Positions 17,785 through 33,552 of a stretch of DNA of 64,000 nucleotides are shown here, piece after piece (the first letter of the stretch is position 1; each line of letters opens with the position of its first letter). The notes beneath the pieces were generated by a model that was not told the DNA's origin, searched no databases, and saw only the letters and a program-made list of their open reading frames with translations. Where the stretch lies: sequence record PQ741806.1; one strand, 5' to 3'. The translations under genes were made by a program, and so were the position numbers.

Positions 17785-20700
17785 TTAAATAACAGCACCT
17801 TTGGAAACTATCCAGTTAGTACCATCCCATAAGAGGGTGAGAACTGTTTTAGTATCACCTAGGTCATCTACTATTACTGGAGTACCATTGTTCCACTGTA
17901 GCACTGCACTAGACAGTGTTGGCATAGCTACCTTACCAAGCAATACAAGAACAGCTGTGATCATGCGATCAACAGGTCCATTCTCTAGTGTAATGGTTTG
18001 GTTAGCAGCAGTTTGAACCCTATAGCACTGCTGGTTAGCAGGTGTTATAGTCAGAGCTGTACCAGTGAATGTACTTGATTTTAGGCTATATGCATCGAAT
18101 GATTTATCTAGCTTCTTCCAAGTAATATTAGCACCAGTACGGCTACGTAGCCAATCACCATCAGCGGTTACATCATTATTCGGACCTTGGAATAGAGTCC
18201 ATGATTTAGCCGCAGCATTACGTAGGAATAGTTGTCCACTAGTAGCATCAGCTTGATCAACTATAATAGTTACAGGTGTCCATTTAGAACCACTAGCTGT
18301 TTTCTCACGTACATAGTTAGTGCCATTAGCACCTTCACTAGGTACTTCACCAATAACTGCGGCTGGTACAGCTACCCATTCACCATTTTGCATACCCATT
18401 AGAGTATCATCGGTTTGCAGAGGTGCTACATCAACCCAGTTACCAGCTACACGACCTTGAGGCTTAGTAGCTTGTGCAGTATCGCGTACTACATCTGAAG
18501 GAATTTCTGGGAATGTAATGGTAGCCCATTCAGTTTCACCCCCTGCAATACCTTTACGAACGTATTGTGCATTAACAACTGGACTAGGTACAGCATCAAT
18601 GGCAGGTGTTGGTAATTCAATAGCAGTCCATTCAACAGCCCCGTCAGCGGTTGCTTTACGGCGACCATAGAAGACACCTACTTCAGCATCTACCACCTCA
18701 TCAACAGGTAGTTCAGTCCAACCGAGTTTGTACCGAACCATTTTCTTATCGACATCTTCTGGATCGACTTCACTAACTGGAACTGACATTAATTTGTAGA
18801 ATACAACCCAGTTAGCATCTTTATACCAAACGGTACCAGTTTTGTCGATACACCAGTCACCACGATTACCATCGATAGAAGTGGGTGCAGTTTGACCTTC
18901 AGGTAGAATTACCCAAGAGGATCCACGTTCACCTTTCTGACCGGTTTTACCAGGGATACCTGGAACACCTTGTTTGCCCTCAGGACCTTCAGGACCCTGC
19001 GGACCCATGGCTAAGACACCTAGGCTTTCCCAAGTAAATGTACCTTCAGTATCGATACTTACAAATACTTCTACTTGTCCTTCAGTATTGGTGCGAATGG
19101 CAATACCTTTACCTACGTTATCAGCAGATGCTACTGGTTTACCAGCATCATCACCAACATAGATAATTAATAGACCACCACCTTGTTTACCTTCAGGACC
19201 TTGTGGGCCTTCGACACCCTGGATACCCTGCTCACCATTTAGATTAATTGGGCCGATATAGCCATCAATTTCCTGACCTTGGTAAGTATAGAGCATTGTA
19301 CCTTCGTTAGTTTCAACCCAGTATGAATCACCAGTTACTAAGTCAGGATCAGTGTCTTTCTTTGGTAGTTGTGAAGCATCGGTTAAAACACCTTTAATGT
19401 TTAAACCTTCACCCGGTTTACCTTGCGGACCTGCCATAATACCAATGCTAGTCCAGCGACTACCGTCCATGTTAACAAATACTTCGCCCGTGGACTTAAC
19501 AGTATATGCTTTCCATTGGTTATCGGCAAGTGCTTCTGGTGGGGTATCTTCAGGAGTGTCAATCGCTGCGATGATCTGGATAGGTTCACCAGCGGGACCT
19601 TGTGGGCCTTCTGGTCCCTCGGGTCCTTCTGGTCCCTGATCACCGTCTTTACCAGGTGCGCCATCTTCACCTTTAGGACCTCGATGTGTACCACTATTTA
19701 CCCAATTACCATCTATCTTAACAAATAAGGTAGATGTGTCTTGTATGAAGTACGCTGCCTGATCAGGAGCATCTGCCGGCAGGGCTGCCTCATTGGCAAC
19801 AGCACCAGTAATAACTACGTTCTTACCATGTAGACTGATTAACCATTCACCCTCAGTACCAGTGAAGCCATTGTCCAATGCTACTTGGAAAGCCGATTTA
19901 CCTTGTGCCCCTGGTTCACCAGGTAGACCTTGTTCGCCATCTTCACCTTGCGGACCTTCAGGGCCCTGCGGGCCACGGAATGAACCCATGGCTGTCCATG
20001 AGATATCAACAGTCGGATCTTGGCCAGTCAGTACATAAACCGTATTGGTGGAACGTACTGAAACACCTTGGTATTGTTCTACACCAGTGGTGGTTAATAG
20101 ATCATCAGCAGTTTCAACTGCTTTAACTACTTCTAAGTTACGACCTTGTGGACCAGGTTCACCTTGTTTACCATCGGGACCCGGATCACCTGTATTACCT
20201 GGTTTACCTTGTGGGCCCTCAGGGCCTTGGAAAGTACCTAGGTCTGACCATGCCCCTTTTACAAAGATGAATAGATGTTCTGGTTTACCAGCTTCCATAG
20301 TAACTAAGTATGCTTCTGATTCTTTAGCTACAGATGGATCAGGTAAATCAGCTGGTGATGGTAGTGAATCCTTAATGGTAAACGGCATTGCTGGTTCACC
20401 CTGAGGACCTTCAGGACCAATTTCACCATCTTTACCTTGCGGACCCTCAGGGCCCTCAGGTCCACGTTCACCCTGTGGTGTAACTGGGAACCAATCATAG
20501 TCATCAATAGTTGGATTCTCTGGCGGATTATTACCTGAGATAAGCATCCACGCCCAGAGTTGATTATTCCATGAATAAGCATCTCCAGGTTTATTACTTT
20601 CAGTCTTAGGTAATTCTAAGTTATTAGGCCAACGACCACGGATAACTAGACCAGTACCATCTGGACCACGAAGTGAACCTGTTTCAACCCAACGACCTTT

Positions 20701-21066
20701 TACAGGGGGGTCTTCATTACCTAGCGGTGATTCCCACACCCATAGCCGATCTTCAACGAACCAAGCATCACCGACATTATGCGTATCTAATGGTTTAATA
20801 TCTTGTTCGAATGTTGCTAGATCAACATTAGCGATAATGTTAATAGCCGGACCAACTGGGCCAGGAGGGCCTTGTTCGCCATCTTTACCCGGCTGACCAT
20901 CTTCACCCTTTAATCCAGGTATAGTAACAGGATCAACGAAAGTAGTATTAAGACCCACCCCGGTAGAAACCGGGATGTGTCCATTAACTACAGAAGTGGG
21001 CTCATCAATTGATGATACCCGTTTGGGGAGTTCCCCGTTTACATAATCTTCAAATGCAGAAGCCAT
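17785..21066 (-). CDS. Collagen-like fibre protein (gp146-like)
   Basis: 1093 aa; many G-X-Y tracts (GPEGPQG) separated by small globular modules; C-terminal WDGTNW domain. Confidence 0.85.
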   Translation of the reverse strand: MASAFEDYVNGELPKRVSSIDEPTSVVNGHIPVSTGVGLNTTFVDPVTIPGLKGEDGQPGKDGEQGPPGPVGPAINIIANVDLATFEQDIKPLDTHNVGDAWFVEDRLWVWESPLGNEDPPVKGRWVETGSLRGPDGTGLVIRGRWPNNLELPKTESNKPGDAYSWNNQLWAWMLISGNNPPENPTIDDYDWFPVTPQGERGPEGPEGPQGKDGEIGPEGPQGEPAMPFTIKDSLPSPADLPDPSVAKESEAYLVTMEAGKPEHLFIFVKGAWSDLGTFQGPEGPQGKPGNTGDPGPDGKQGEPGPQGRNLEVVKAVETADDLLTTTGVEQYQGVSVRSTNTVYVLTGQDPTVDISWTAMGSFRGPQGPEGPQGEDGEQGLPGEPGAQGKSAFQVALDNGFTGTEGEWLISLHGKNVVITGAVANEAALPADAPDQAAYFIQDTSTLFVKIDGNWVNSGTHRGPKGEDGAPGKDGDQGPEGPEGPEGPQGPAGEPIQIIAAIDTPEDTPPEALADNQWKAYTVKSTGEVFVNMDGSRWTSIGIMAGPQGKPGEGLNIKGVLTDASQLPKKDTDPDLVTGDSYWVETNEGTMLYTYQGQEIDGYIGPINLNGEQGIQGVEGPQGPEGKQGGGLLIIYVGDDAGKPVASADNVGKGIAIRTNTEGQVEVFVSIDTEGTFTWESLGVLAMGPQGPEGPEGKQGVPGIPGKTGQKGERGSSWVILPEGQTAPTSIDGNRGDWCIDKTGTVWYKDANWVVFYKLMSVPVSEVDPEDVDKKMVRYKLGWTELPVDEVVDAEVGVFYGRRKATADGAVEWTAIELPTPAIDAVPSPVVNAQYVRKGIAGGETEWATITFPEIPSDVVRDTAQATKPQGRVAGNWVDVAPLQTDDTLMGMQNGEWVAVPAAVIGEVPSEGANGTNYVREKTASGSKWTPVTIIVDQADATSGQLFLRNAAAKSWTLFQGPNNDVTADGDWLRSRTGANITWKKLDKSFDAYSLKSSTFTGTALTITPANQQCYRVQTAANQTITLENGPVDRMITAVLVLLGKVAMPTLSSAVLQWNNGTPVIVDDLGDTKTVLTLLWDGTNWIVSKGAVI

Positions 21067-26805: not shown

Positions 26806-27732
<927 letters not shown>

Positions 27733-27768
27733 TTAGTACACTGTACTATTGAGTAAATTTGTAAGAGT

Positions 27769-27788
27769 TCCCCTCCACATGGAGGGGA
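27769..27788 (-). terminator. Hairpin terminator
   Basis: tcccctcc-acat-ggagggga with tttatgctgtta flank. Confidence 0.7.
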
Positions 27789-27797
27789 TTTATGCTG

Positions 27798-28286
27798 TTA
27801 AGCAAATTTTTCAGGAGCACCACGTACCATTACACAGATCCATGATTGTCCATTATGGGAACGTTTTACTTCATGTAATTGGGATAGATGAAATACTAAT
27901 CCTTCACCTTTTCCAATTAATAGTTCTTCGCCATCTAAAATGAACTTAGCATCAGGTCCAATATTCCAAGCAAGAATAGTACCGGACTCGGGTTTATCTA
28001 CCCAATAATTCATCTCATCTAGAAATCCATCTATTTTGGGGAAATCTAAAAACCATACTTGTAATGCTTTGTTAAATAGTTCTTCGCCTAAAATTGGTTT
28101 AATTTCTTTACGCTGTTTAGCAGTCCAATTAAACCATTTTGAAGTATTATAAACACTACATGCTTTAAGGCCATTAGTGCCAACTCGCATACGGTGGCCA
28201 TATGAGTCTCTAAATGAAACTTCACCTTTAAGCTTTGTTAATGTTTTTAGTTCTGTCTTAGATAGAGTCTTAAGTTTAATTGCCAT
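27798..28286 (-). CDS. Degenerate double-stranded beta-helix (2OG-oxygenase-like) protein
   Basis: ...FILDGEELLIGKGEGLVFHLSQLHEVK... keeps the distal His but lacks HxD. Confidence 0.5.
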   Translation of the reverse strand: MAIKLKTLSKTELKTLTKLKGEVSFRDSYGHRMRVGTNGLKACSVYNTSKWFNWTAKQRKEIKPILGEELFNKALQVWFLDFPKIDGFLDEMNYWVDKPESGTILAWNIGPDAKFILDGEELLIGKGEGLVFHLSQLHEVKRSHNGQSWICVMVRGAPEKFA

Positions 28287-28294
28287 GTTGTACC

Positions 28295-28855
28295 CTACTC
28301 GTAGAGATATATAAGGACGTATCTTTTATTTTTAACTGGAGGGACCTCATGTGGCTCTGAACGGATTGGAAAAATAGTAGCCCTACCTGGTACATCCTGA
28401 TAAAACTCACCATTGATCGTTATACCATCGCCATTGTCATTTAATGCAATAACCATGTTGTAACGATAAACAGCTTGGTCGATGTGCTCAGGCATACCTG
28501 TACCAATTTCATATCGATTGATTAGTACTTCGCCTAACCAAGCACCTTCTACCTTAGGTGCAATATGAAATAGTAATTCCCGTAATTCTACTGGCATTTG
28601 GTTATGACCTAAAAACCAATAATCACATTCAGTGATACCTTTGGTTGGGATACTATTAATTTTTTTCCGATTAAACCACCAGGAATCTTCCAGTGTATCC
28701 AGATAAGATACAAGGTCAGCTGCAAATTCAGCTGAAAACACGTCCTTGGTCGATCTTTCGTGGGCCGATAAGCTCATGCAGGCCACCTGCATATCGATGT
28801 GCTTTCTCAGCGTCGAGATCTTCCCTGGATTTATAGATAACGTCTGGGCTCTCAA
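28295..28855 (-). CDS. 2OG-Fe(II) dioxygenase superfamily protein
   Basis: INRYEIGTGMPEHID (HxD), PHEVPPV (distal His), KRYVLI (2OG-binding Arg); start uncertain. Confidence 0.75.
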   Translation of the reverse strand: MRAQTLSINPGKISTLRKHIDMQVACMSLSAHERSTKDVFSAEFAADLVSYLDTLEDSWWFNRKKINSIPTKGITECDYWFLGHNQMPVELRELLFHIAPKVEGAWLGEVLINRYEIGTGMPEHIDQAVYRYNMVIALNDNGDGITINGEFYQDVPGRATIFPIRSEPHEVPPVKNKRYVLIYLYE

Positions 28856-29330
28856 TTAGGGCCTCCTTATGCGCGCGATTAGTTCGTTTAACAAGATCAA
28901 TATAATCAAGCATTTCTTCTAGTTCATCTAACTCTTGACCATATTTTTCAGCTAGCTGTTTAATTGCACGTGCAAGGATATTAATTTGCTCAGTCACTGG
29001 ATAGCGTTCAGTAATTTTGTAGGCCACTTTACTATTTAAGTGATCTTCAGTAATCACTTGTGGCGCTTCTTCTTTAGGAACAATCTTCCAATCGGAAAGT
29101 GTAGGTTGTTTACCAGGTGTATTACTTACGACTACATCATAAGTACCCATTTCGGCTTCAACAAAAATGGTGTGCTCACGTGACTTAGCATCGAATGCAT
29201 CTAAAGGTAGATAGCCTACGCTTTGTAGGAATACCTCAGAAGTACGGTTAAACATTAATAGTACTTTTACTTTATCTTCAGTAGGCGCAGTAGCTAAAGA
29301 TAGTTCTTGGAGTGATAACGGATTGTTCAT
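28728..29330 (-). CDS. Tail-fibre-assembly/chaperone-like protein (gp136-like)
   Basis: Start re-assigned to ATG 29330 (TAATG overlap); ITERYPVTEQINIL pattern; follows the fibre genes. Confidence 0.5.
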   Translation of the reverse strand: MNNPLSLQELSLATAPTEDKVKVLLMFNRTSEVFLQSVGYLPLDAFDAKSREHTIFVEAEMGTYDVVVSNTPGKQPTLSDWKIVPKEEAPQVITEDHLNSKVAYKITERYPVTEQINILARAIKQLAEKYGQELDELEEMLDYIDLVKRTNRAHKEALIESPDVIYKSREDLDAEKAHRYAGGLHELIGPRKIDQGRVFS

Positions 29331-30721
29331 TATACAAGTGCTCCAGCTCGAATCATCCAACGCCATGTACCATTATTTCTAATTGCTACATATTGCTGGT
29401 AATAATAGGCTTCAAAGGGGGTATTAGTTCTAACACCTACAACAGCGTAAGTGCCTTCAGGATATTTGGTATTATCGGTAAACATCGTATTTAACGTGTT
29501 TAATGCTTCTGCTTCACTATTTACCTGGCCTAAGGTAATGGCTTTAATCTTATCTTTGTTCCACTCTTTAAAAGCTTCAACCCAGTCTTGCCAAGTACCA
29601 TCGCTTGCTAGATAATATCTTTCAGGGTCATTTAATATTGATGCATTACCTTTACCTAATGCACCCCATTTAAATACACCGCTAGTTACTTCTTCAGCTG
29701 GAATATCTTTTCGAACATCATTCCAGAAATTCTGATATACCTTACCTGTTCCAGCAACTGGATAACCCTGACTATTGGTAGTAGCACCAATAGTAGTTGC
29801 GTTAGCTGCCTGTTCATTGATACCTAACAATGGAGCTATTTTAGAATCCATTACTGGTTTGGTATATGATCCAACTTGTTCAGCTGTAACAACATGCGGG
29901 TTATTAAAGTTTTTAATATGCGCTGCAAGTTTAGCTAATGTATCGATATTAAGAATACGATAAATACCACCAATTGGCATGTATTTATTATTTACATTTC
30001 TATTAACTGACTCAGCTTCGGTAGCAAAACCCCAGTTAGATATCTTATCAAGCGGTGGAATTAACTTGAATCGATCATCGGCATGCGGATTATTATAATC
30101 AGTTAAGTGTGCTGTAACTCGATCTCTATAATCGTCCACAGCAGTTTTTGCATCACTGAGATAAGCTTTATAATAATCATCAGCAGCATTATCCATAGCA
30201 CTTCTACCGACCCGATAAGCGTGTGCTATTCGGTTTAATTCGGTTACCATTGTATCGGTGCCATAAATCTGCCAATATTCATGACCATGGGGTGCAGGCG
30301 GATATGCATCGGGTTTACCAATAATATCATCCCAAGTGAAACTTAATTCATCTAATTCAAGTTTATCAAAAACAGCTTTAAGTTCTAATGCTGAAATACT
30401 AAAGAAACCACCAACTGCTCTATATGTAACTTGGACATTAGGACTAACTTTAGGATCAGTTACTACAACAATACCCATTACTTCTAAACCAGTCATTTCA
30501 GATAACTGTGAATAAAGGTAGGTTGTTTTATATTGATCTTTATTTAAAGATAAACCAGTCTTCTTATCACGTAGATTAAAGTCCTTCGTATAGAAACCAC
30601 CATGTGTACATATCAGTACACGGTGCGTTTTATTAGCGACTTGAATGAGTGTGTGTTCCTCATCTACAATGTAATTAGAAGCTAATTTAGCTTTTAGATC
30701 TAATGGTAAAAAAGTAATCAT
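29330..30721 (-). CDS. Tail fibre family protein (gp135-like)
   Basis: Start at ATG 30721 (TAATG overlap); NPH repeats; N-terminal domain shared with gp131/133/134. Confidence 0.8.
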   Translation of the reverse strand: MITFLPLDLKAKLASNYIVDEEHTLIQVANKTHRVLICTHGGFYTKDFNLRDKKTGLSLNKDQYKTTYLYSQLSEMTGLEVMGIVVVTDPKVSPNVQVTYRAVGGFFSISALELKAVFDKLELDELSFTWDDIIGKPDAYPPAPHGHEYWQIYGTDTMVTELNRIAHAYRVGRSAMDNAADDYYKAYLSDAKTAVDDYRDRVTAHLTDYNNPHADDRFKLIPPLDKISNWGFATEAESVNRNVNNKYMPIGGIYRILNIDTLAKLAAHIKNFNNPHVVTAEQVGSYTKPVMDSKIAPLLGINEQAANATTIGATTNSQGYPVAGTGKVYQNFWNDVRKDIPAEEVTSGVFKWGALGKGNASILNDPERYYLASDGTWQDWVEAFKEWNKDKIKAITLGQVNSEAEALNTLNTMFTDNTKYPEGTYAVVGVRTNTPFEAYYYQQYVAIRNNGTWRWMIRAGALV

Positions 30722-32094
30722 TATGCCGGTTCTCCTATATTGGTCCACGTTGATCCCACTTTACGTAAGAATAAAGTATTCCTATAGGAAGTAGCTGTTG
30801 TACCATTACCATGCCCAATAACGAATTCTTGCTCGTAATGGCAGATAGCTAGTGAACCAGGCCACCATTGTTCAGGATCTGAGAAGTATGTGTTATGGAA
30901 AGCAATTGCTTCTTGGATAGACTTGAAGTTAGTATTGTTCCAGTGAACCATCGTTCCTGTTTTCTGGAAACGATTGAATATAAATCCAAAGTGTGTCCAT
31001 TGGCCATTAGGCATTAATGTCCAATCACGACCTGGCCAAGTCACTGAGTTACCGATCCGACCAGGTGCTAGCCGACCAGTCGTCAATACGCTTAAAGGCA
31101 TTTTAGCACGTACCGTTTCACCCATGCTATAAACATCTTGACCAAATAATAGTTTAGATGTATTAGCTGTTTTACCTTTATCTAATTTTTGATTTAGTAA
31201 AATATTAGCTTGGGTAACAGTATATGTATTTAATTGTTCAGCTGTTACTCTGTGTGGGTTAGTGGTAACATCGTTAACGTGGGCTAAATACTGTACTGTA
31301 TAATTGGTATCAACAGATAACTTCATTGACCATGGCGTAGCATAGACATTCATGATAGCGCCATTTGGTTGTTTGGCTTGTGTTTCAGTTGCAATACCAG
31401 CGTTATAAACATTACCTAATGCCACTTGCCCTTTACGTGTTTGGTGTGGGTTAGTGGTGGTATCACTGATGTGTGTAGTAAGCCGTGCTTCAATTGTACT
31501 CAGATCAGCTTCTATTAGACTTAACTGATATTTAAACTCATCTAAAATGGAGTCATATGAGTCAGATGAACTTTTCTTTAATAAGTCAGTTATTTCTTTT
31601 AACTTAACAACTCTAGGTGTAAAACCATAAAGTTCCCAATAGGCATGCATATGTCCATTAGGTTTGAATTGGTCAGGAATATCTAAGATATTAGACCAAT
31701 GTGGTTTACGGGTATTATTTAAAAGAGCATTAGCATGCTCAGAAATGGAAGGCGCAAGGTTACAGTATATACCACCGCACATCTGAGCATCAATGTAAAT
31801 ATCCTCGTGGACATCTTGTTTTGTAATGACAATTACTGAACAAGCTTCAAGTCCAGTCTTCTCGATTACCTCCGGATTAATACCAGTGCACTGATAATCC
31901 ATCTCTGGATTTAACTCATTTTGCCTACCATCTCTGATAACCATTCCTTTAGTATAAAAGTAACCCTTATCCATCACGATGATGCGATAGGGGAATCCTT
32001 TCTGTTTTGCTAGTGAATGGTATTCACCCTTTGTTCGGTTACTATAACTCTCTCCAGTTTCATCAAATGGAAGAGGTAAAAGTAATGGATTCAT
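30721..32094 (-). CDS. Tail fibre family protein (gp134-like)
   Basis: LPFDETG N-terminus; HISDTTTNPH repeats. Confidence 0.8.
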   Translation of the reverse strand: MNPLLLPLPFDETGESYSNRTKGEYHSLAKQKGFPYRIIVMDKGYFYTKGMVIRDGRQNELNPEMDYQCTGINPEVIEKTGLEACSVIVITKQDVHEDIYIDAQMCGGIYCNLAPSISEHANALLNNTRKPHWSNILDIPDQFKPNGHMHAYWELYGFTPRVVKLKEITDLLKKSSSDSYDSILDEFKYQLSLIEADLSTIEARLTTHISDTTTNPHQTRKGQVALGNVYNAGIATETQAKQPNGAIMNVYATPWSMKLSVDTNYTVQYLAHVNDVTTNPHRVTAEQLNTYTVTQANILLNQKLDKGKTANTSKLLFGQDVYSMGETVRAKMPLSVLTTGRLAPGRIGNSVTWPGRDWTLMPNGQWTHFGFIFNRFQKTGTMVHWNNTNFKSIQEAIAFHNTYFSDPEQWWPGSLAICHYEQEFVIGHGNGTTATSYRNTLFLRKVGSTWTNIGEPA

Positions 32095-32105
32095 CTAAAC
32101 TATCC

Positions 32106-33494
32106 TTATGGAATTACCCAGCCACCTTGTGAACGGAAACACACGTAGTTAGGAGTATAATCAACGAAAATCAATCCGTTACCAGCTGCCTGGATTTTCT
32201 GTTCTTTAATAGTAAAGAATACAGTAGATCCAATAGGCCATGTATCTAGATTAGTAAAGTTAGTTCTACAGAAATCTAATGCTGCCTGCACGGATGGTTG
32301 TAATCCTAGTGCATAAAACTTTAACTTAACCGGAAATGAATACTCTGTGGCTAATTGATCAAAGTGTGTAAAAATACCATTCCCACGGAGTGGTGCTTTC
32401 CATTGTCCCATTGCCCCGGAACCAATCCGATTTATATTGATGACATTACTCTGGCCATCGCCAGCTGTAAAGTTCACGTCTGTGTCAAAGTTCTTACGCA
32501 TCCACCAAATAAGATCGCTATAACCCATTAAAGTAGCAGTTGGTTGCCCTTTAGGTTTATAATAAACCATATTAGTATTAGCTACTGTATCAGTCTTTAA
32601 ATATTTACCAGTAATTCGTGAATCAAAATCACTTTTCAAATACGACTGTACATGCGTATTTTTGACTTTATGTGGATTATCACGGCGAGCTATGTGGGCA
32701 TTAAGTGGTTTTATAGCTATTTCATCTAATACGCCATATGCTAACTGCGGTGTTAGATAATGTGCATTAGATTGACCTAGTTGAGCAATGGCTGGAGTAG
32801 CCAATGGAAAGTTATTAACTAAACCTAGTTCAACATTAGTTGGGGTAATCTTGTGTGGATTAGCTTTATCTTGAATATGTTTTTCTAGGCGATCATTAAA
32901 TTTCTTTAAGAACTCATCATAAATCTCTTTAACTTTACTACGGTATTCATCTTCACCGCTTGTATCACCAGCCATGAGTGCCTGTGTTATCCACTCCATC
33001 TCGTTATTATAAGGCTGATACGTATCAAGATGCCATCGTTCGCCAACTAACTCACCGTCTTTCCAATATGGTTCGTTACCAGTGTAGTCGAGATCTTTTG
33101 GCTTTGGCTTACCATTTGTTTTCCACCAGTTAATATAATCGTCGATAACTGTGAAACTAAACGCTAGATCACCGCCTACCATGTGAGCTGAAGTATACAC
33201 TATTGGTGTACTAGGTGTTTTTAAGAAAACAATTGCTGAACATATTTCTTGACCGACATACGCACTAGCATCTTTGTGATAATAAGTAACAATATAATCA
33301 ATATCTTTAACTAAACGATTATATTTACCATCATAAACTTCTAACCCTTTTGTATAGAATCCACCATGATATAACTTGATGATTCTATAGTCGAATCCCT
33401 GATACTGAACTAGAGTATGAGGCTCGCTACCAATGAAACAATCTGGATTTGTACCTAATGGATCAAATGGTAATTGTAAAATAGGATTATACAT
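32106..33494 (-). CDS. Tail fibre family protein (gp133-like)
   Basis: LPFDPLGTNP N-terminus; NPH repeats. Confidence 0.8.
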   Translation of the reverse strand: MYNPILQLPFDPLGTNPDCFIGSEPHTLVQYQGFDYRIIKLYHGGFYTKGLEVYDGKYNRLVKDIDYIVTYYHKDASAYVGQEICSAIVFLKTPSTPIVYTSAHMVGGDLAFSFTVIDDYINWWKTNGKPKPKDLDYTGNEPYWKDGELVGERWHLDTYQPYNNEMEWITQALMAGDTSGEDEYRSKVKEIYDEFLKKFNDRLEKHIQDKANPHKITPTNVELGLVNNFPLATPAIAQLGQSNAHYLTPQLAYGVLDEIAIKPLNAHIARRDNPHKVKNTHVQSYLKSDFDSRITGKYLKTDTVANTNMVYYKPKGQPTATLMGYSDLIWWMRKNFDTDVNFTAGDGQSNVININRIGSGAMGQWKAPLRGNGIFTHFDQLATEYSFPVKLKFYALGLQPSVQAALDFCRTNFTNLDTWPIGSTVFFTIKEQKIQAAGNGLIFVDYTPNYVCFRSQGGWVIP

Positions 33495-33523: not shown

Positions 33524-33552
33524 AAGAGACACAGCTTTTGGCTGTGTCTCTT
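33524..33552 (-). terminator. Hairpin terminator/attenuator inside the fibre cluster
   Basis: aagagacacagc-ttttg-gctgtgtctctt. Confidence 0.7.

What the first reader, a model, noticed from the sequence alone, without database searches (positions are those of the whole stretch)
27798..28855. 2OG-Fe(II) dioxygenase plus degenerate DSBH partner at the end of the tail-fibre operon
Seen: 28295..28855 has the full HxD...H...R set (MPEHID, PHEV, KRY). The next gene has a similar beta-helix C-terminus with only the distal His. Both are co-transcribed after the gp131-136 fibre and chaperone genes. Established: this superfamily includes prolyl-4-hydroxylases, Asp/Asn hydroxylases and AlkB. Inference: the phage may post-translationally hydroxylate its own fibres, such as G-X-Pro triplets in the collagen-like gp146, with the inactive paralog as a substrate adaptor. 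An AlkB-like nucleic-acid role is the alternative.
Basis: partly seen in the sequence, partly recalled or inferred. Interest (0 to 1): 0.7.

Follow-up and report, generated by a model that had tools for sequence, protein, structure and literature searches.

The report
Oxygenase trio behind phage tail fibres
A phiKZ-type Pseudomonas phage encodes an apparently active iron/2-oxoglutarate oxygenase, a catalytically dead copy of it and a third small protein, and this trio always lies directly after tail-fibre genes in several unrelated phage types, so it is most likely an undescribed fibre-maturation kit.

Summary
The window is a phiKZ-type phage (100% identical to Pa_AttikonH10). Its His-x-Asp...His...Arg set is intact in 34 of 35 relatives. 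The next gene, PHIKZ138 (27798-28286), is a remote paralog with the same fold. It has lost the HxD and the Arg and keeps only the distal His.

New here: PHIKZ136, 137 and 138 form a fixed three-gene cassette, found in the same order in every locus examined. These include phiKZ-like jumbo phages, a T4-like phage, a 115-kb phage and P2-like tail modules. In the P2-like modules the cassette fills the slot of the fibre-assembly chaperone gene. The gene just upstream always ends in a related fibre C-terminal domain. The 201phi2-1 homologs are not flagged as virion proteins.

The link to fibres is therefore well supported. The proposed collagen-like gp146 substrate is not: one trio-bearing phage has no collagen-like gene. 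An AlkB-like or "DNA endonuclease" role (the database label) is disfavoured but not excluded. No chemistry has been shown, and a published knockdown of PHIKZ137 had no plaque effect. Verdict: a new variant of a known kind, of moderate to high interest.

The parts
28295..28777 (-). PHIKZ137 homolog, 160 aa. Predicted active Fe(II)/2-oxoglutarate oxygenase with H98-x-D100, H143 and R152.
   Evidence: Pfam PF13640 E 1.6e-5. Catalytic residues invariant. AF2 pLDDT 91.9. Foldseek PDB and BFVD hits to 2OG oxygenases.
27798..28286 (-). PHIKZ138 homolog, 162 aa. 2OG-oxygenase-fold paralog without HxD and without the Arg; distal His138 retained. Predicted pseudo-enzyme partner.
   Evidence: hhalign against the PHIKZ137 family: 94.6%, E 7e-8. 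AF2 pLDDT 97. Foldseek hits AlkB, ALKBH5, PiuC-like and PHD2. Family of 73 representatives. Conservation counts.
28728..29330 (-). PHIKZ136 homolog, 200 aa. Third member of the cassette: variable N-terminus, helical middle, invariant C-terminal E-G-G-x-H-E-x-x-G motif. Its last 50 nt overlap the start of PHIKZ137.
   Evidence: Alignment A5. No Pfam, PDB or NCBIfam relative. Always directly upstream of the oxygenase gene.
29330..30721 (-). PHIKZ135 homolog, tail-fibre protein encoded directly upstream of the cassette.
   Evidence: PHROG 2163 virion structural protein. Component of the hetero-hexameric fibre base in the phiKZ cryo-EM atlas. Its C-terminal domain family is shared with fibres upstream of the trio elsewhere.
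30721..32094 (-). PHIKZ134 homolog, tail-fibre paralog. Its C-terminal ~120 residues (with a G-N-G motif) are the best match to the fibre tips that precede the trio in other phage types.
   Evidence: jackhmmer domain hits at the C-termini of the upstream proteins in L006, L007, L028, L029, L030/31 and L032. hhalign A3 vs A4: 79%, E 1.6e-5.
32106..33494 (-). PHIKZ133 homolog, tail-fibre paralog. Probable first gene of the PHIKZ133-138 unit.
   Evidence: Annotation. Terminator-like hairpin just upstream at 33524-33552.
27769..27788 (.). Perfectly palindromic GC-rich hairpin immediately after the stop codon of the last cassette gene. It marks the end of the tightly packed PHIKZ133-138 block.
   Evidence: It matches the published phiKZ terminator motif, but with the TTAT tail on the + (antisense) strand.

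Best explanation
PHIKZ136, PHIKZ137 and PHIKZ138 are a non-virion, three-protein tail-fibre maturation module. It plays the part that a fibre-assembly chaperone (Tfa-type) plays in other phages.

Proposed mechanism (inferred): PHIKZ137 binds Fe(II) and 2-oxoglutarate and oxidises, most likely hydroxylates, a side chain of a protein substrate. That substrate is the C-terminal (distal) domain of the fibre protein encoded just upstream (PHIKZ133/134/135 in phiKZ), or possibly the invariant C-terminal tail of PHIKZ136. PHIKZ138 is a paralog that has lost its metal and 2OG ligands. It would act as a non-catalytic partner that holds or presents the substrate. PHIKZ136, with a variable N-terminus and a conserved C-terminus, would be the adaptor between the variable fibre tip and the conserved enzyme pair.

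Shown: the folds, the conserved catalytic residues, the paralogy, the strict three-gene synteny, the position after fibre genes, and that the 201phi2-1 homologs are not flagged as virion proteins.

Inferred: catalysis, the identity of the substrate, and complex formation.
For: 1. Enzyme. The PHIKZ137 fold and HxD...H...R are conserved. The Arg sits 9 residues after the distal His, which by my recollection is the spacing in PHD-type hydroxylases. Structural neighbours are protein hydroxylases, including viral ones that modify virion fibres or collagen-like proteins: mimivirus L230 and the PBCV-1 prolyl hydroxylase.

2. Pseudo-enzyme paralog.

3. Synteny. The order 136-137-138 is found in all 32 loci first collected and in the P2-like loci L033, L036 and L037. 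Orthologs of PHIKZ138 are only 40-46% identical yet have the same length and place.

4. Context in four tail architectures:
- phiKZ-like.
- QdP_Psa3, 115 kb, after a gene with the Pfam tail-collar-fibre N-terminal domain.
- T4-like Milchi, between a tail-collar-fibre gene and the head-tail adaptor gene.
- P2-like modules with the order V-W-J-I-fibre-[trio]-sheath-tube, where phage P2 has its fibre-assembly gene G (P2 gene order from my own knowledge) and no other chaperone gene is called.

5. The gene upstream always ends in a related C-terminal domain.

6. Not structural. The 201phi2-1 homologs gp221-223 are not flagged as virion proteins by mass spectrometry although their neighbours are. 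In the RefSeq phiKZ lines read, PHIKZ136 and PHIKZ138 carry 'RNA sequence analysis' as evidence, against 'ESI-MS/MS analysis' for PHIKZ135, 143, 145 and 146. A search of the 2026 phiKZ atlas text found no mention of gp136 or gp137. PHIKZ136 and PHIKZ138 are transcribed at levels like their neighbours, and all three are listed in SEC-MS source data from infected cells.

7. The trio is accessory and tracks the fibre type, not the phiKZ core. The neighbour gp139 is in 291 phage records of many host genera. PHIKZ137 is in 72, all Pseudomonas phages.

8. All three proteins lack hydrophobic segments, so they are probably cytoplasmic.
Against: - No modification of any fibre protein has been shown.
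- The fibre C-termini are unresolved in the cryo-EM atlas.
- Antisense knockdown of PHIKZ137 with three oligomers had no effect on plaque formation or ChmA level. Knockdown of the gene annotated as tail sheath (PHIKZ145) also scored no effect, so the screen may be insensitive for this class of genes.
- Homology of the fibre C-terminal domains across lineages is only moderately supported: hhalign 79%, weak for Milchi and L032.
- Subfamily assignment is not clean. The best sequence-level PDB hit is a short ALKBH8 stretch, and the Pfam score is just below the curated cut-off.
- Genes can stay linked to a receptor-binding tip for reasons other than acting on it.
- No complex prediction could be run.
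Confidence: 0.5

Rival explanations
1. Receptor-linked accessory. The trio does not act on the fibre. It acts on the host molecule that this fibre tip recognises, or on a cytoplasmic precursor of it. That would block superinfection or stop progeny from sticking to debris. It is co-inherited with the tip domain because both concern the same receptor, as with exclusion genes that sit next to receptor-binding genes in other phages.
For: The same co-transfer with a fibre tip across lineages is expected under this model too. There is a weak Pfam hit to the Asp/Asn beta-hydroxylase family (E 0.075), which from my own knowledge also holds the lipid A hydroxylase LpxO. Lack of a plaque phenotype on knockdown fits a non-essential accessory.
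Against: All three proteins are soluble, with no signal peptide-like or membrane segment. The trio occupies exactly the chaperone slot inside P2-like tail operons. The top structural neighbours are protein hydroxylases.
Confidence: 0.12
2. One reading: PHIKZ137 is a collagen-type prolyl (or lysyl) hydroxylase that modifies the G-X-Y repeats of collagen-like gp146.
For: gp146 (17785-21066, minus strand) has 7 runs totalling 64 G-X-Y triplets, 12 with Pro in Y. Viral collagen hydroxylases are among the structural neighbours.
Against: The whole genome of the trio-bearing phage QdP_Psa3 has no collagen-like ORF. No G-X-Y run lies in L033, L037, L029 or L030, and only short Gly-rich runs of 5-6 triplets (frames not checked) in L007 and L036. 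gp146 lies eight genes away, behind lysis and recombination genes. Pro is mostly in the X position.
Confidence: 0.07
3. Nucleic-acid role. PHIKZ137 is an AlkB-like demethylase or base oxidase, or, as databases label it, a 'DNA endonuclease'.
For: PHROG 2297 is labelled DNA endonuclease. The PHIKZ137 profile's best PDB sequence hit is ALKBH8 around the N-x-Y...HxD strand (E 0.007, 35 residues). Pfam 2OG-FeII_Oxy_2 gives E 0.13. The PHIKZ138 model's top Foldseek hits are ALKBH5, NMAD-1 and AlkB.
Against: No AlkB-family entry is in the top 50 structural hits of the active protein. The Arg lies 9 residues after the distal His, and there is no second Arg 6 residues further on (sequence). No nuclease domain was detected. 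The gene sits inside tail operons, including P2-like ones. The AlkB-like partner is catalytically dead.
Confidence: 0.07
4. Host-takeover hydroxylase. PHIKZ137 modifies a host protein such as a translation factor or ribosomal protein, as the Pseudomonas prolyl hydroxylase PPHD does with EF-Tu.
For: PPHD and its EF-Tu complex are among the top structural hits.
Against: This does not explain the strict linkage to PHIKZ136, PHIKZ138 and fibre tips in four tail architectures. The gene is packed among tail-fibre genes rather than early host-takeover genes; temporal class was not established.
Confidence: 0.06

Closest known systems
Mimivirus L230 and collagen lysyl hydroxylase LH3; PBCV-1 viral collagen prolyl 4-hydroxylase
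   Same: Virus-encoded or collagen-type Fe(II)/2OG protein hydroxylases. They are among the best structural matches of PHIKZ137. From my own knowledge, L230 modifies collagen-like proteins of the virion surface fibres, which is a precedent for a virus oxidising its own fibres.
   Different: Only 12-18% identity and TM 0.55-0.7. PHIKZ137 is a minimal 160-aa domain with no glycosyltransferase part. Collagen-like repeats do not co-occur with the trio. PHIKZ137 comes with a dead paralog and a third protein.
Tail-fibre assembly chaperones (P2 gpG, Mu gpU, lambda Tfa; T4 gp38 and gp57A)
   Same: Encoded directly downstream of the fibre gene. The trio occupies this slot in P2-like modules. The 201phi2-1 homologs are not flagged as virion proteins. 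The trio travels with the fibre tip.
   Different: No sequence relationship was detected. Three genes instead of one. One of them is a redox enzyme, which no described fibre chaperone is, as far as my literature searches show.
Tpa1 / Ofd1 / OGFOD1 ribosomal prolyl hydroxylases (from my own knowledge; not returned by a tool)
   Same: A catalytic 2OG-oxygenase barrel works together with a second barrel of the same fold that has lost the metal ligands.
   Different: There the two barrels are fused in one chain, whereas here they are separate adjacent genes. None of them appeared in the top 50 Foldseek hits, so this is an analogy, not a tested relationship.
PiuC / YbiX-like PKHD-type hydroxylases (3dkq, 9qn4) and Pseudomonas PPHD
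   Same: Top Foldseek hits of both PHIKZ137 and PHIKZ138. Bacterial, small, same HxD...H...R layout.
   Different: Cellular genes with other contexts (iron uptake, EF-Tu). No relative of PHIKZ137 was found in one genome each of 185,579 bacterial species by pattern scan. A prophage copy did turn up when the P2-like homolog was used as query.
AlkB family
   Same: Same superfamily. A local N-x-Y...HxD likeness to ALKBH8. PHIKZ138's best fold hits are AlkB-family entries.
   Different: Different spacing of the 2OG-binding Arg. No AlkB among the top 50 hits for the active protein. Tail-operon context.

Membership tests
Fe(II)/2-oxoglutarate-dependent oxygenase superfamily (PHIKZ137) | Double-stranded beta-helix (jelly-roll) core | tested here: met
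   AF2 pLDDT 91.9 with eight core strands. Foldseek probability 1.00 to many solved 2OG oxygenases.
Fe(II)/2-oxoglutarate-dependent oxygenase superfamily (PHIKZ137) | HxD/E...H facial triad | tested here: met
   H98, D100 and H143 are invariant in 30 homologs and present in 34 of 35 locus copies.
Fe(II)/2-oxoglutarate-dependent oxygenase superfamily (PHIKZ137) | Basic residue for the 2OG C5 carboxylate on the last core strand | tested here: met
   R152 is invariant, 9 residues after the distal His, on strand 152-159. Its role is inferred from position.
Fe(II)/2-oxoglutarate-dependent oxygenase superfamily (PHIKZ137) | Score above the curated Pfam cut-off | tested here: inconclusive
   PF13640 scores 26.2 bits against a cut-off of 27. 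Several homologs carry a precomputed PF13640 hit.
Fe(II)/2-oxoglutarate-dependent oxygenase superfamily (PHIKZ137) | 2OG-dependent turnover | not testable with these tools
   Biochemical property.
Prolyl/lysyl hydroxylase (PHD, P4H, PLOD) clade (PHIKZ137) | Closest relatives belong to this clade | tested here: inconclusive
   Top 50 PDB fold hits are PiuC-like, LH3, PHD2, PPHD, vCPH, L230 and AspH, and the best Pfam hit is the P4H-type PF13640. But identities are 12-18%, and the only sequence-level PDB hit is ALKBH8.
AlkB family (PHIKZ137) | AlkB-type 2OG-binding R-x5-R motif well after the distal His, and AlkB proteins as nearest neighbours | tested here: not met
   After H143 the only Arg is R152. 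No AlkB entry is in the top 50 fold hits. Pfam 2OG-FeII_Oxy_2 gives E 0.13. The motif definition is from my own knowledge.
Catalytic 2OG oxygenase (PHIKZ138) | Fold | tested here: met
   AF2 pLDDT 97. Foldseek hits AlkB, ALKBH5, PiuC-like and PHD2. hhalign to the PHIKZ137 family gives 94.6%.
Catalytic 2OG oxygenase (PHIKZ138) | HxD/E...H triad and 2OG-binding Arg/Lys | tested here: not met
   There is no His in residues 86-100 of the phiKZ protein. At the position two before the conserved Asp (F88), 39 of 55 members have Phe and 2 have His, so an HxD-like triplet cannot be ruled out for those two. The His+9 position is Gln in the phiKZ protein; the family count at that column was not made. Only H138 (52/55) is kept, with a family-specific D90 (50/55).
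Tfa-type tail-fibre assembly chaperone (the trio) | Homology to known chaperone families | tested here: not met
   No Pfam, NCBIfam or PDB relative was found for PHIKZ136. PHIKZ137 and PHIKZ138 are oxygenase-fold proteins.
Tfa-type tail-fibre assembly chaperone (the trio) | Encoded immediately downstream of the fibre gene; not a virion component | tested here: met
   This supports 'works like' a chaperone, not membership.
Collagen hydroxylase acting on collagen-like gp146 | Co-occurrence of the enzyme with collagen-like genes | tested here: not met
   QdP_Psa3 was scanned over its whole genome in three pieces and has no collagen-like ORF. The window control finds 7 runs and 64 triplets, all the size of the gp146 set.

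The most novel reading that the evidence does not exclude
A previously unrecognised class of tail-fibre maturation system. An Fe(II)/2OG hydroxylase, its pseudo-enzyme paralog and an adaptor replace the classical fibre chaperone, and they oxidatively modify the receptor-binding tip in phiKZ-like, T4-like, P2-like and other myophages. The production of infectious particles by these phages, including phiKZ-type therapy candidates, would then depend on oxygen, iron and 2-oxoglutarate in the host cell.
Probability: 0.35. Interest if true: 0.8.

Novelty: new variant of a known kind. Interest (0 to 1): 0.62.

Why it matters
phiKZ is the model nucleus-forming jumbo phage and a relative of therapy candidates, yet its fibre tips are unresolved and nothing is known about how they are assembled.

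If the trio matures the fibres by oxidation, it adds a new chemistry to phage receptor-binding proteins. It explains three conserved 'hypothetical' genes in at least four phage lineages. It also predicts that low oxygen or low iron, as in biofilms or infected lungs, limits the quality of progeny.

There is a practical correction too. The widespread label 'DNA endonuclease' for this family is very likely wrong, and it has already shaped how a functional-genomics screen classified the gene.

Tried and rejected
- BLASTP of PHIKZ137 against PHIKZ138 found nothing. Only profiles and folds show the relationship.
- Single-sequence searches of both proteins against PDB sequences gave nothing useful.
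- The word-based homolog search found only one cluster for PHIKZ138. The exhaustive HMMER search found 73.
- The first scan of bacterial genomes with the PHIKZ137 profile found no relative. A second scan with the P2-like homolog found one prophage.
- tblastn with fibre C-terminal domains reaches only close relatives, so the reciprocal test (tip domain without the trio) could not be made.
- PHIKZ136 has no detectable relative in Pfam, NCBIfam or PDB.
- Literature searches for gp137, PHIKZ137, or 2OG oxygenases linked to tail fibres found no study of these genes.
- Transcript-boundary tables of the phiKZ and 201phi2-1 long-read studies are not held, so the operon ends could not be checked.
- The hairpin after the cassette matches the phiKZ terminator motif only in the antisense orientation, so I do not claim it as the operon terminator.
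No complex prediction was possible.
Full report
**What the window is.** The region 27000-30000 is 100% identical to Pseudomonas phage Pa_AttikonH10 and about 98-99% identical to some 47 other phiKZ-type phages. Against phiKZ itself the two genes of the finding are PHIKZ137 and PHIKZ138. They lie on the minus strand of the window after PHIKZ131-136 and before PHIKZ139-146.

**The observation: PHIKZ137.**
- The minus-strand ORF ending at 28295 contains MPEHID, PHEV and KRY as quoted.
- The 186-aa reading from a TTG at 28855 runs 128 nt into PHIKZ136 and is not supported.
- The ATG at 28777 (160 aa) follows an AGGTGG motif and is the annotated phiKZ start. Most of the 64 homolog clusters are 160 aa. 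It is also the start targeted by published antisense oligomers.
- Pfam gives 2OG-FeII_Oxy_3 at E 1.6e-5, 26.2 bits against a cut-off of 27. Weaker hits go to Asp/Asn hydroxylase and to the AlkB-type 2OG-FeII_Oxy_2.
- In 30 homologs down to 39% identity, H98, D100, H143 and R152 are invariant. In 35 copies taken from genomic loci, 34 have all four.
- AlphaFold2 with this alignment gives pLDDT 91.9 and a jelly-roll of eight strands after a helical N-terminal part.
- Foldseek against the PDB returns 187 hits at E 0.001 or better. The top 50 are PiuC-like hydroxylases, lysyl hydroxylase LH3, PHD2, Pseudomonas PPHD, the PBCV-1 collagen prolyl hydroxylase, mimivirus L230, PolD and AspH. None is an AlkB-family entry.
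- At the sequence level the family profile's only near-significant PDB hit is a 35-residue stretch of ALKBH8 around the N-x-Y...HxD strand (E 0.007). The subfamily therefore leans to the prolyl/lysyl-hydroxylase side but is not settled.

**The observation: PHIKZ138.**
- Pairwise BLASTP with PHIKZ137 shows nothing, and the word-based search found only the phiKZ cluster.
- The genes in the same position in 201phi2-1 (gp223) and PhiPA3 (gp157) are the same length and 40-46% identical.
- An exhaustive HMMER search found 73 representative relatives.
- A profile of 55 of them aligns to the PHIKZ137 family profile over 137 columns at 94.6% probability, E 7e-8. The distal His motifs (PHEV / LHEV) are in register.
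- The AlphaFold2 model has pLDDT 97. It matches ALKBH5, NMAD-1, AlkB, PiuC-like proteins, PHD2 and PPHD.
- The PHIKZ137 model matches the predicted structure of PhiPA3 gp157 at TM 0.71 over 158 columns.
- No HxD is seen in the phiKZ protein or in the aligned members inspected. In the phiKZ protein the position nine residues after the distal His is Gln instead of Arg. H138 is kept in 52 of 55 sequences, together with family-specific residues: D90 in 50/55, G87, G127, F132, S44 and an Arg-rich N-terminal motif.

- PHIKZ136 (28728-29330, 200 aa) belongs with the two. I searched the ORFs of the first 32 fetched loci with profiles of the three families. These loci were phage records plus 25 IMG/VR contigs found with the PHIKZ137 profile. 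Every locus has 136-like, 137-like and 138-like genes adjacent, in that order and on one strand.
- Two 231-kb contigs carry a second, intact 137-like gene after the 138-like one.
- PHIKZ136 has no relative in Pfam, NCBIfam or the PDB.
- Its family has a variable N-terminus, a conserved helical middle and an invariant C-terminal E-G-G-x-H-E-x-x-G motif.
- In phiKZ-type phages the last 50 nt of PHIKZ136 overlap the start of PHIKZ137.

**The cassette follows fibre genes in unrelated tail architectures.**
- phiKZ-like phages: it follows the paralogous fibre genes PHIKZ133-135.
- QdP_Psa3 (115 kb): it follows a 478-aa protein with the Pfam tail-collar-fibre N-terminal domain.
- The T4-like phage Milchi (175 kb): it lies between a 'tail collar fiber protein' and the head-tail adaptor gene, after the baseplate wedge genes.
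- P2-like modules: a search with the PHIKZ136 profile brought in 177-aa relatives whose contigs read base plate V, W, J, I, a tail fibre with the same Pfam domain, then 136-like, 137-like (HxD, His and Arg intact) and 138-like genes, then sheath, tube, tape measure, U, X and D.
- In phage P2 that slot holds gene G, the fibre-assembly chaperone (gene order from my own knowledge). No other chaperone gene is called in these loci.
- One such prophage sits in the genome of the methanotrophic gill symbiont of Bathymodiolus platifrons. There the 136-like and sheath reading frames are shorter than in relatives, so that copy looks decayed.

**What is shared upstream is a fibre tip, not collagen.**
- An iterated search with PHIKZ134 finds its last ~120 residues at the C-terminus of the protein encoded just upstream of the cassette. 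Domain E-values in that small database were 2.5e-19 for QdP_Psa3, about 2e-8 for L028 and L029, 8e-4 for Milchi and 0.07 for L032. The 231-kb contigs also match.
- A profile of the phiKZ-type tips against a profile of the others gives 79% probability, E 1.6e-5.
- The second profile hits the P2-like fibres at 1e-35 to 1e-42.
- Many of these tips share a G-N-G motif near the end.
- This homology is moderately, not strongly, supported.
- gp146 (17785-21066) is indeed collagen-like, with 7 runs and 64 G-X-Y triplets. Pro is mostly in X (26) and less in Y (12).
- QdP_Psa3, scanned over its whole length in three separate pieces, has no collagen-like ORF. Its two G-X-Y runs are a Gly-rich linker in a large tail protein and a stretch antisense to an annotated gene. 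No G-X-Y run lies in L033, L037, L029 or L030; L007 and L036 show only short Gly-rich runs of 5-6 triplets, whose frames I did not check.

**Where the proteins are.**
- In 201phi2-1 the three homologs (gp221-223) lack the 'identified as virion protein by mass spectrometry' note that their neighbours carry.
- The phiKZ record flags PHIKZ130-135, 143, 145 and 146, but not 136-138, as structural. The RefSeq lines read give 'RNA sequence analysis' for PHIKZ136 and PHIKZ138.
- The 2026 cryo-EM atlas reports 40 constituent proteins, with a fibre base made of three gp131 plus gp133, gp134 and gp135. It could not resolve the distal parts. A search of its text found no mention of gp136 or gp137, and gp139 appears as a baseplate protein.
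- PHIKZ136 and PHIKZ138 are transcribed at levels like PHIKZ139 in the first data column of the knockdown RNA-seq table, listed as the 15-min control.
- All three are listed among phiKZ proteins in the source data of a co-fractionation study of infected cells. I did not check the meaning of the count column.
- None of the three has a hydrophobic segment.
- The cassette is accessory. The neighbouring baseplate gene gp139 is in 291 phage records from many host genera. PHIKZ137 is in 72, all Pseudomonas phages.

**How it most likely works.** The anatomy is that of a fibre accessory module. It is encoded right after the fibre gene, travels with the fibre tip between phage lineages, its 201phi2-1 homologs are not flagged as virion proteins, and it stands where P2-like phages keep their chaperone.
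- The near-perfect conservation of the metal and 2OG ligands in PHIKZ137 argues that catalysis matters, not just the fold.
- The loss of those ligands in PHIKZ138, with strong conservation of other residues, argues for a binding role.
- The pattern in PHIKZ136 (variable N-terminus, invariant C-terminal motif) suits an adaptor between a variable fibre tip and a conserved enzyme pair.
- I therefore propose that PHIKZ137, with PHIKZ138 as non-catalytic partner and PHIKZ136 as adaptor, hydroxylates a residue of the fibre C-terminal domain, or of the PHIKZ136 tail, during assembly. My confidence is 0.5.
- A catalytic barrel paired with a dead barrel of the same fold is known, fused in one chain, from the Tpa1/Ofd1/OGFOD1 hydroxylases. 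That comparison is from my own knowledge. It is an analogy only, because none of them appeared in the top fold hits.

**Evidence against, and rivals.**
- No modification has been seen.
- The Nature 2025 antisense screen listed PHIKZ137 as 'DNA endonuclease'. It found no effect of three oligomers on plaques or ChmA level. The same screen also saw no effect for the gene annotated as tail sheath, so the result is weak evidence.
- Co-inheritance with a receptor-binding tip would also be expected for a function aimed at the receptor itself, such as exclusion or release (0.12).
- The collagen model (0.07), an AlkB-like or nuclease role (0.07) and a host-protein hydroxylase (0.06) are each less consistent with the synteny.
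- The 'DNA endonuclease' label comes from PHROG 2297. Nothing I found supports it.

**Novelty.**
- That PHIKZ137 is a 2OG oxygenase is already annotated in some records: Churi and the UniProt name of the Psa21 ortholog.
- I found no paper that describes any of the following: the dead paralog, PHIKZ136, the fixed trio, its fibre-tip linkage across four tail architectures, or its place in the chaperone slot.
- I rate it a new variant of a known kind: a fibre accessory or chaperone module that here carries a redox enzyme.

**Limits.**
- I had no model coordinates and could run no complex prediction.
- Transcript-end tables were not available.
- The tip-domain homology is moderate.
- The reciprocal test (tip domain without the trio) was out of reach of tblastn.
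- Tool outputs replaced the gp-style label of the phiKZ gene 138 with 'xxxxx'. I did not try to get round this.

Noticed in passing
window 28295-28777; PHROG 2297: The PHIKZ137 family is labelled 'DNA endonuclease' in PHROGs. The label has spread to many GenBank phage records and to the gene table of a 2025 functional-genomics screen. Fold, motifs and Pfam all say 2OG oxygenase, and no nuclease signature was found.
   Followed up: yes
window 27769-27798: The hairpin right after the last cassette gene matches the published phiKZ terminator motif, but with its TTAT tail on the + strand, antisense to the fibre genes. The motif's 3' half occurs 14 times in the window against 0.2 expected, several times as back-to-back pairs.
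   Followed up: partly
window 28728-28777 and alignment A5: PHIKZ136 ends in an invariant E-G-G-x-H-E-x-x-G motif. In phiKZ-type phages these codons overlap the poorly conserved first residues of PHIKZ137 in another frame (50-nt overlap). The tail could be a docking peptide or itself a substrate.
   Followed up: partly
L030 8131-8688 and L031 8164-8673: Two 231-kb viral contigs carry a second 137-like gene with intact HxD...H...R after the 138-like gene. Their 138-like proteins, and several others, have an insertion of about 50 residues.
   Followed up: partly
window 30721-32094 and 29330-30721; L033 6077-6997; L036 6032-6997: Some fibres upstream of the trio carry HxH motifs: three evenly spaced in each P2-like fibre, and one each in PHIKZ134 and PHIKZ135. 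From my own knowledge, HxH motifs bind iron in T4 fibre tips. Other trio-linked fibres have none.
   Followed up: no
window 17785-21066: gp146 is strongly collagen-like (7 runs, 64 G-X-Y triplets, Pro mainly in the X position), and this part of the window has raised G+C (0.44-0.46 against about 0.38). The main text of the cryo-EM atlas does not mention gp145 or gp146.
   Followed up: partly
L037 (NZ_BDMN01000021.1): A P2-like prophage with the fibre-plus-trio arrangement lies in the genome of the methanotrophic gill symbiont of the mussel Bathymodiolus platifrons, far from Pseudomonas. Its 136-like and sheath reading frames are shorter than in relatives, so it looks decayed.
   Followed up: partly
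P0157: A partial protein deposited as Klebsiella pneumoniae is 91% identical to phiKZ-type PHIKZ136. This is probably phage DNA in a bacterial assembly rather than a Klebsiella gene.
   Followed up: no
window 26806-27702: The next gene, gp139 (Pfam DUF7208), is annotated as hypothetical in many records. In the 2026 atlas it is the dimeric band protein that ties the outer baseplate to the wedges. It occurs in 291 phage records across many host genera, unlike the trio.
   Followed up: yes
tool outputs: The gp-style label of phiKZ gene 138 is replaced by 'xxxxx' in tool outputs, including those of my own scripts. The locus-tag form is not masked.
   Followed up: no
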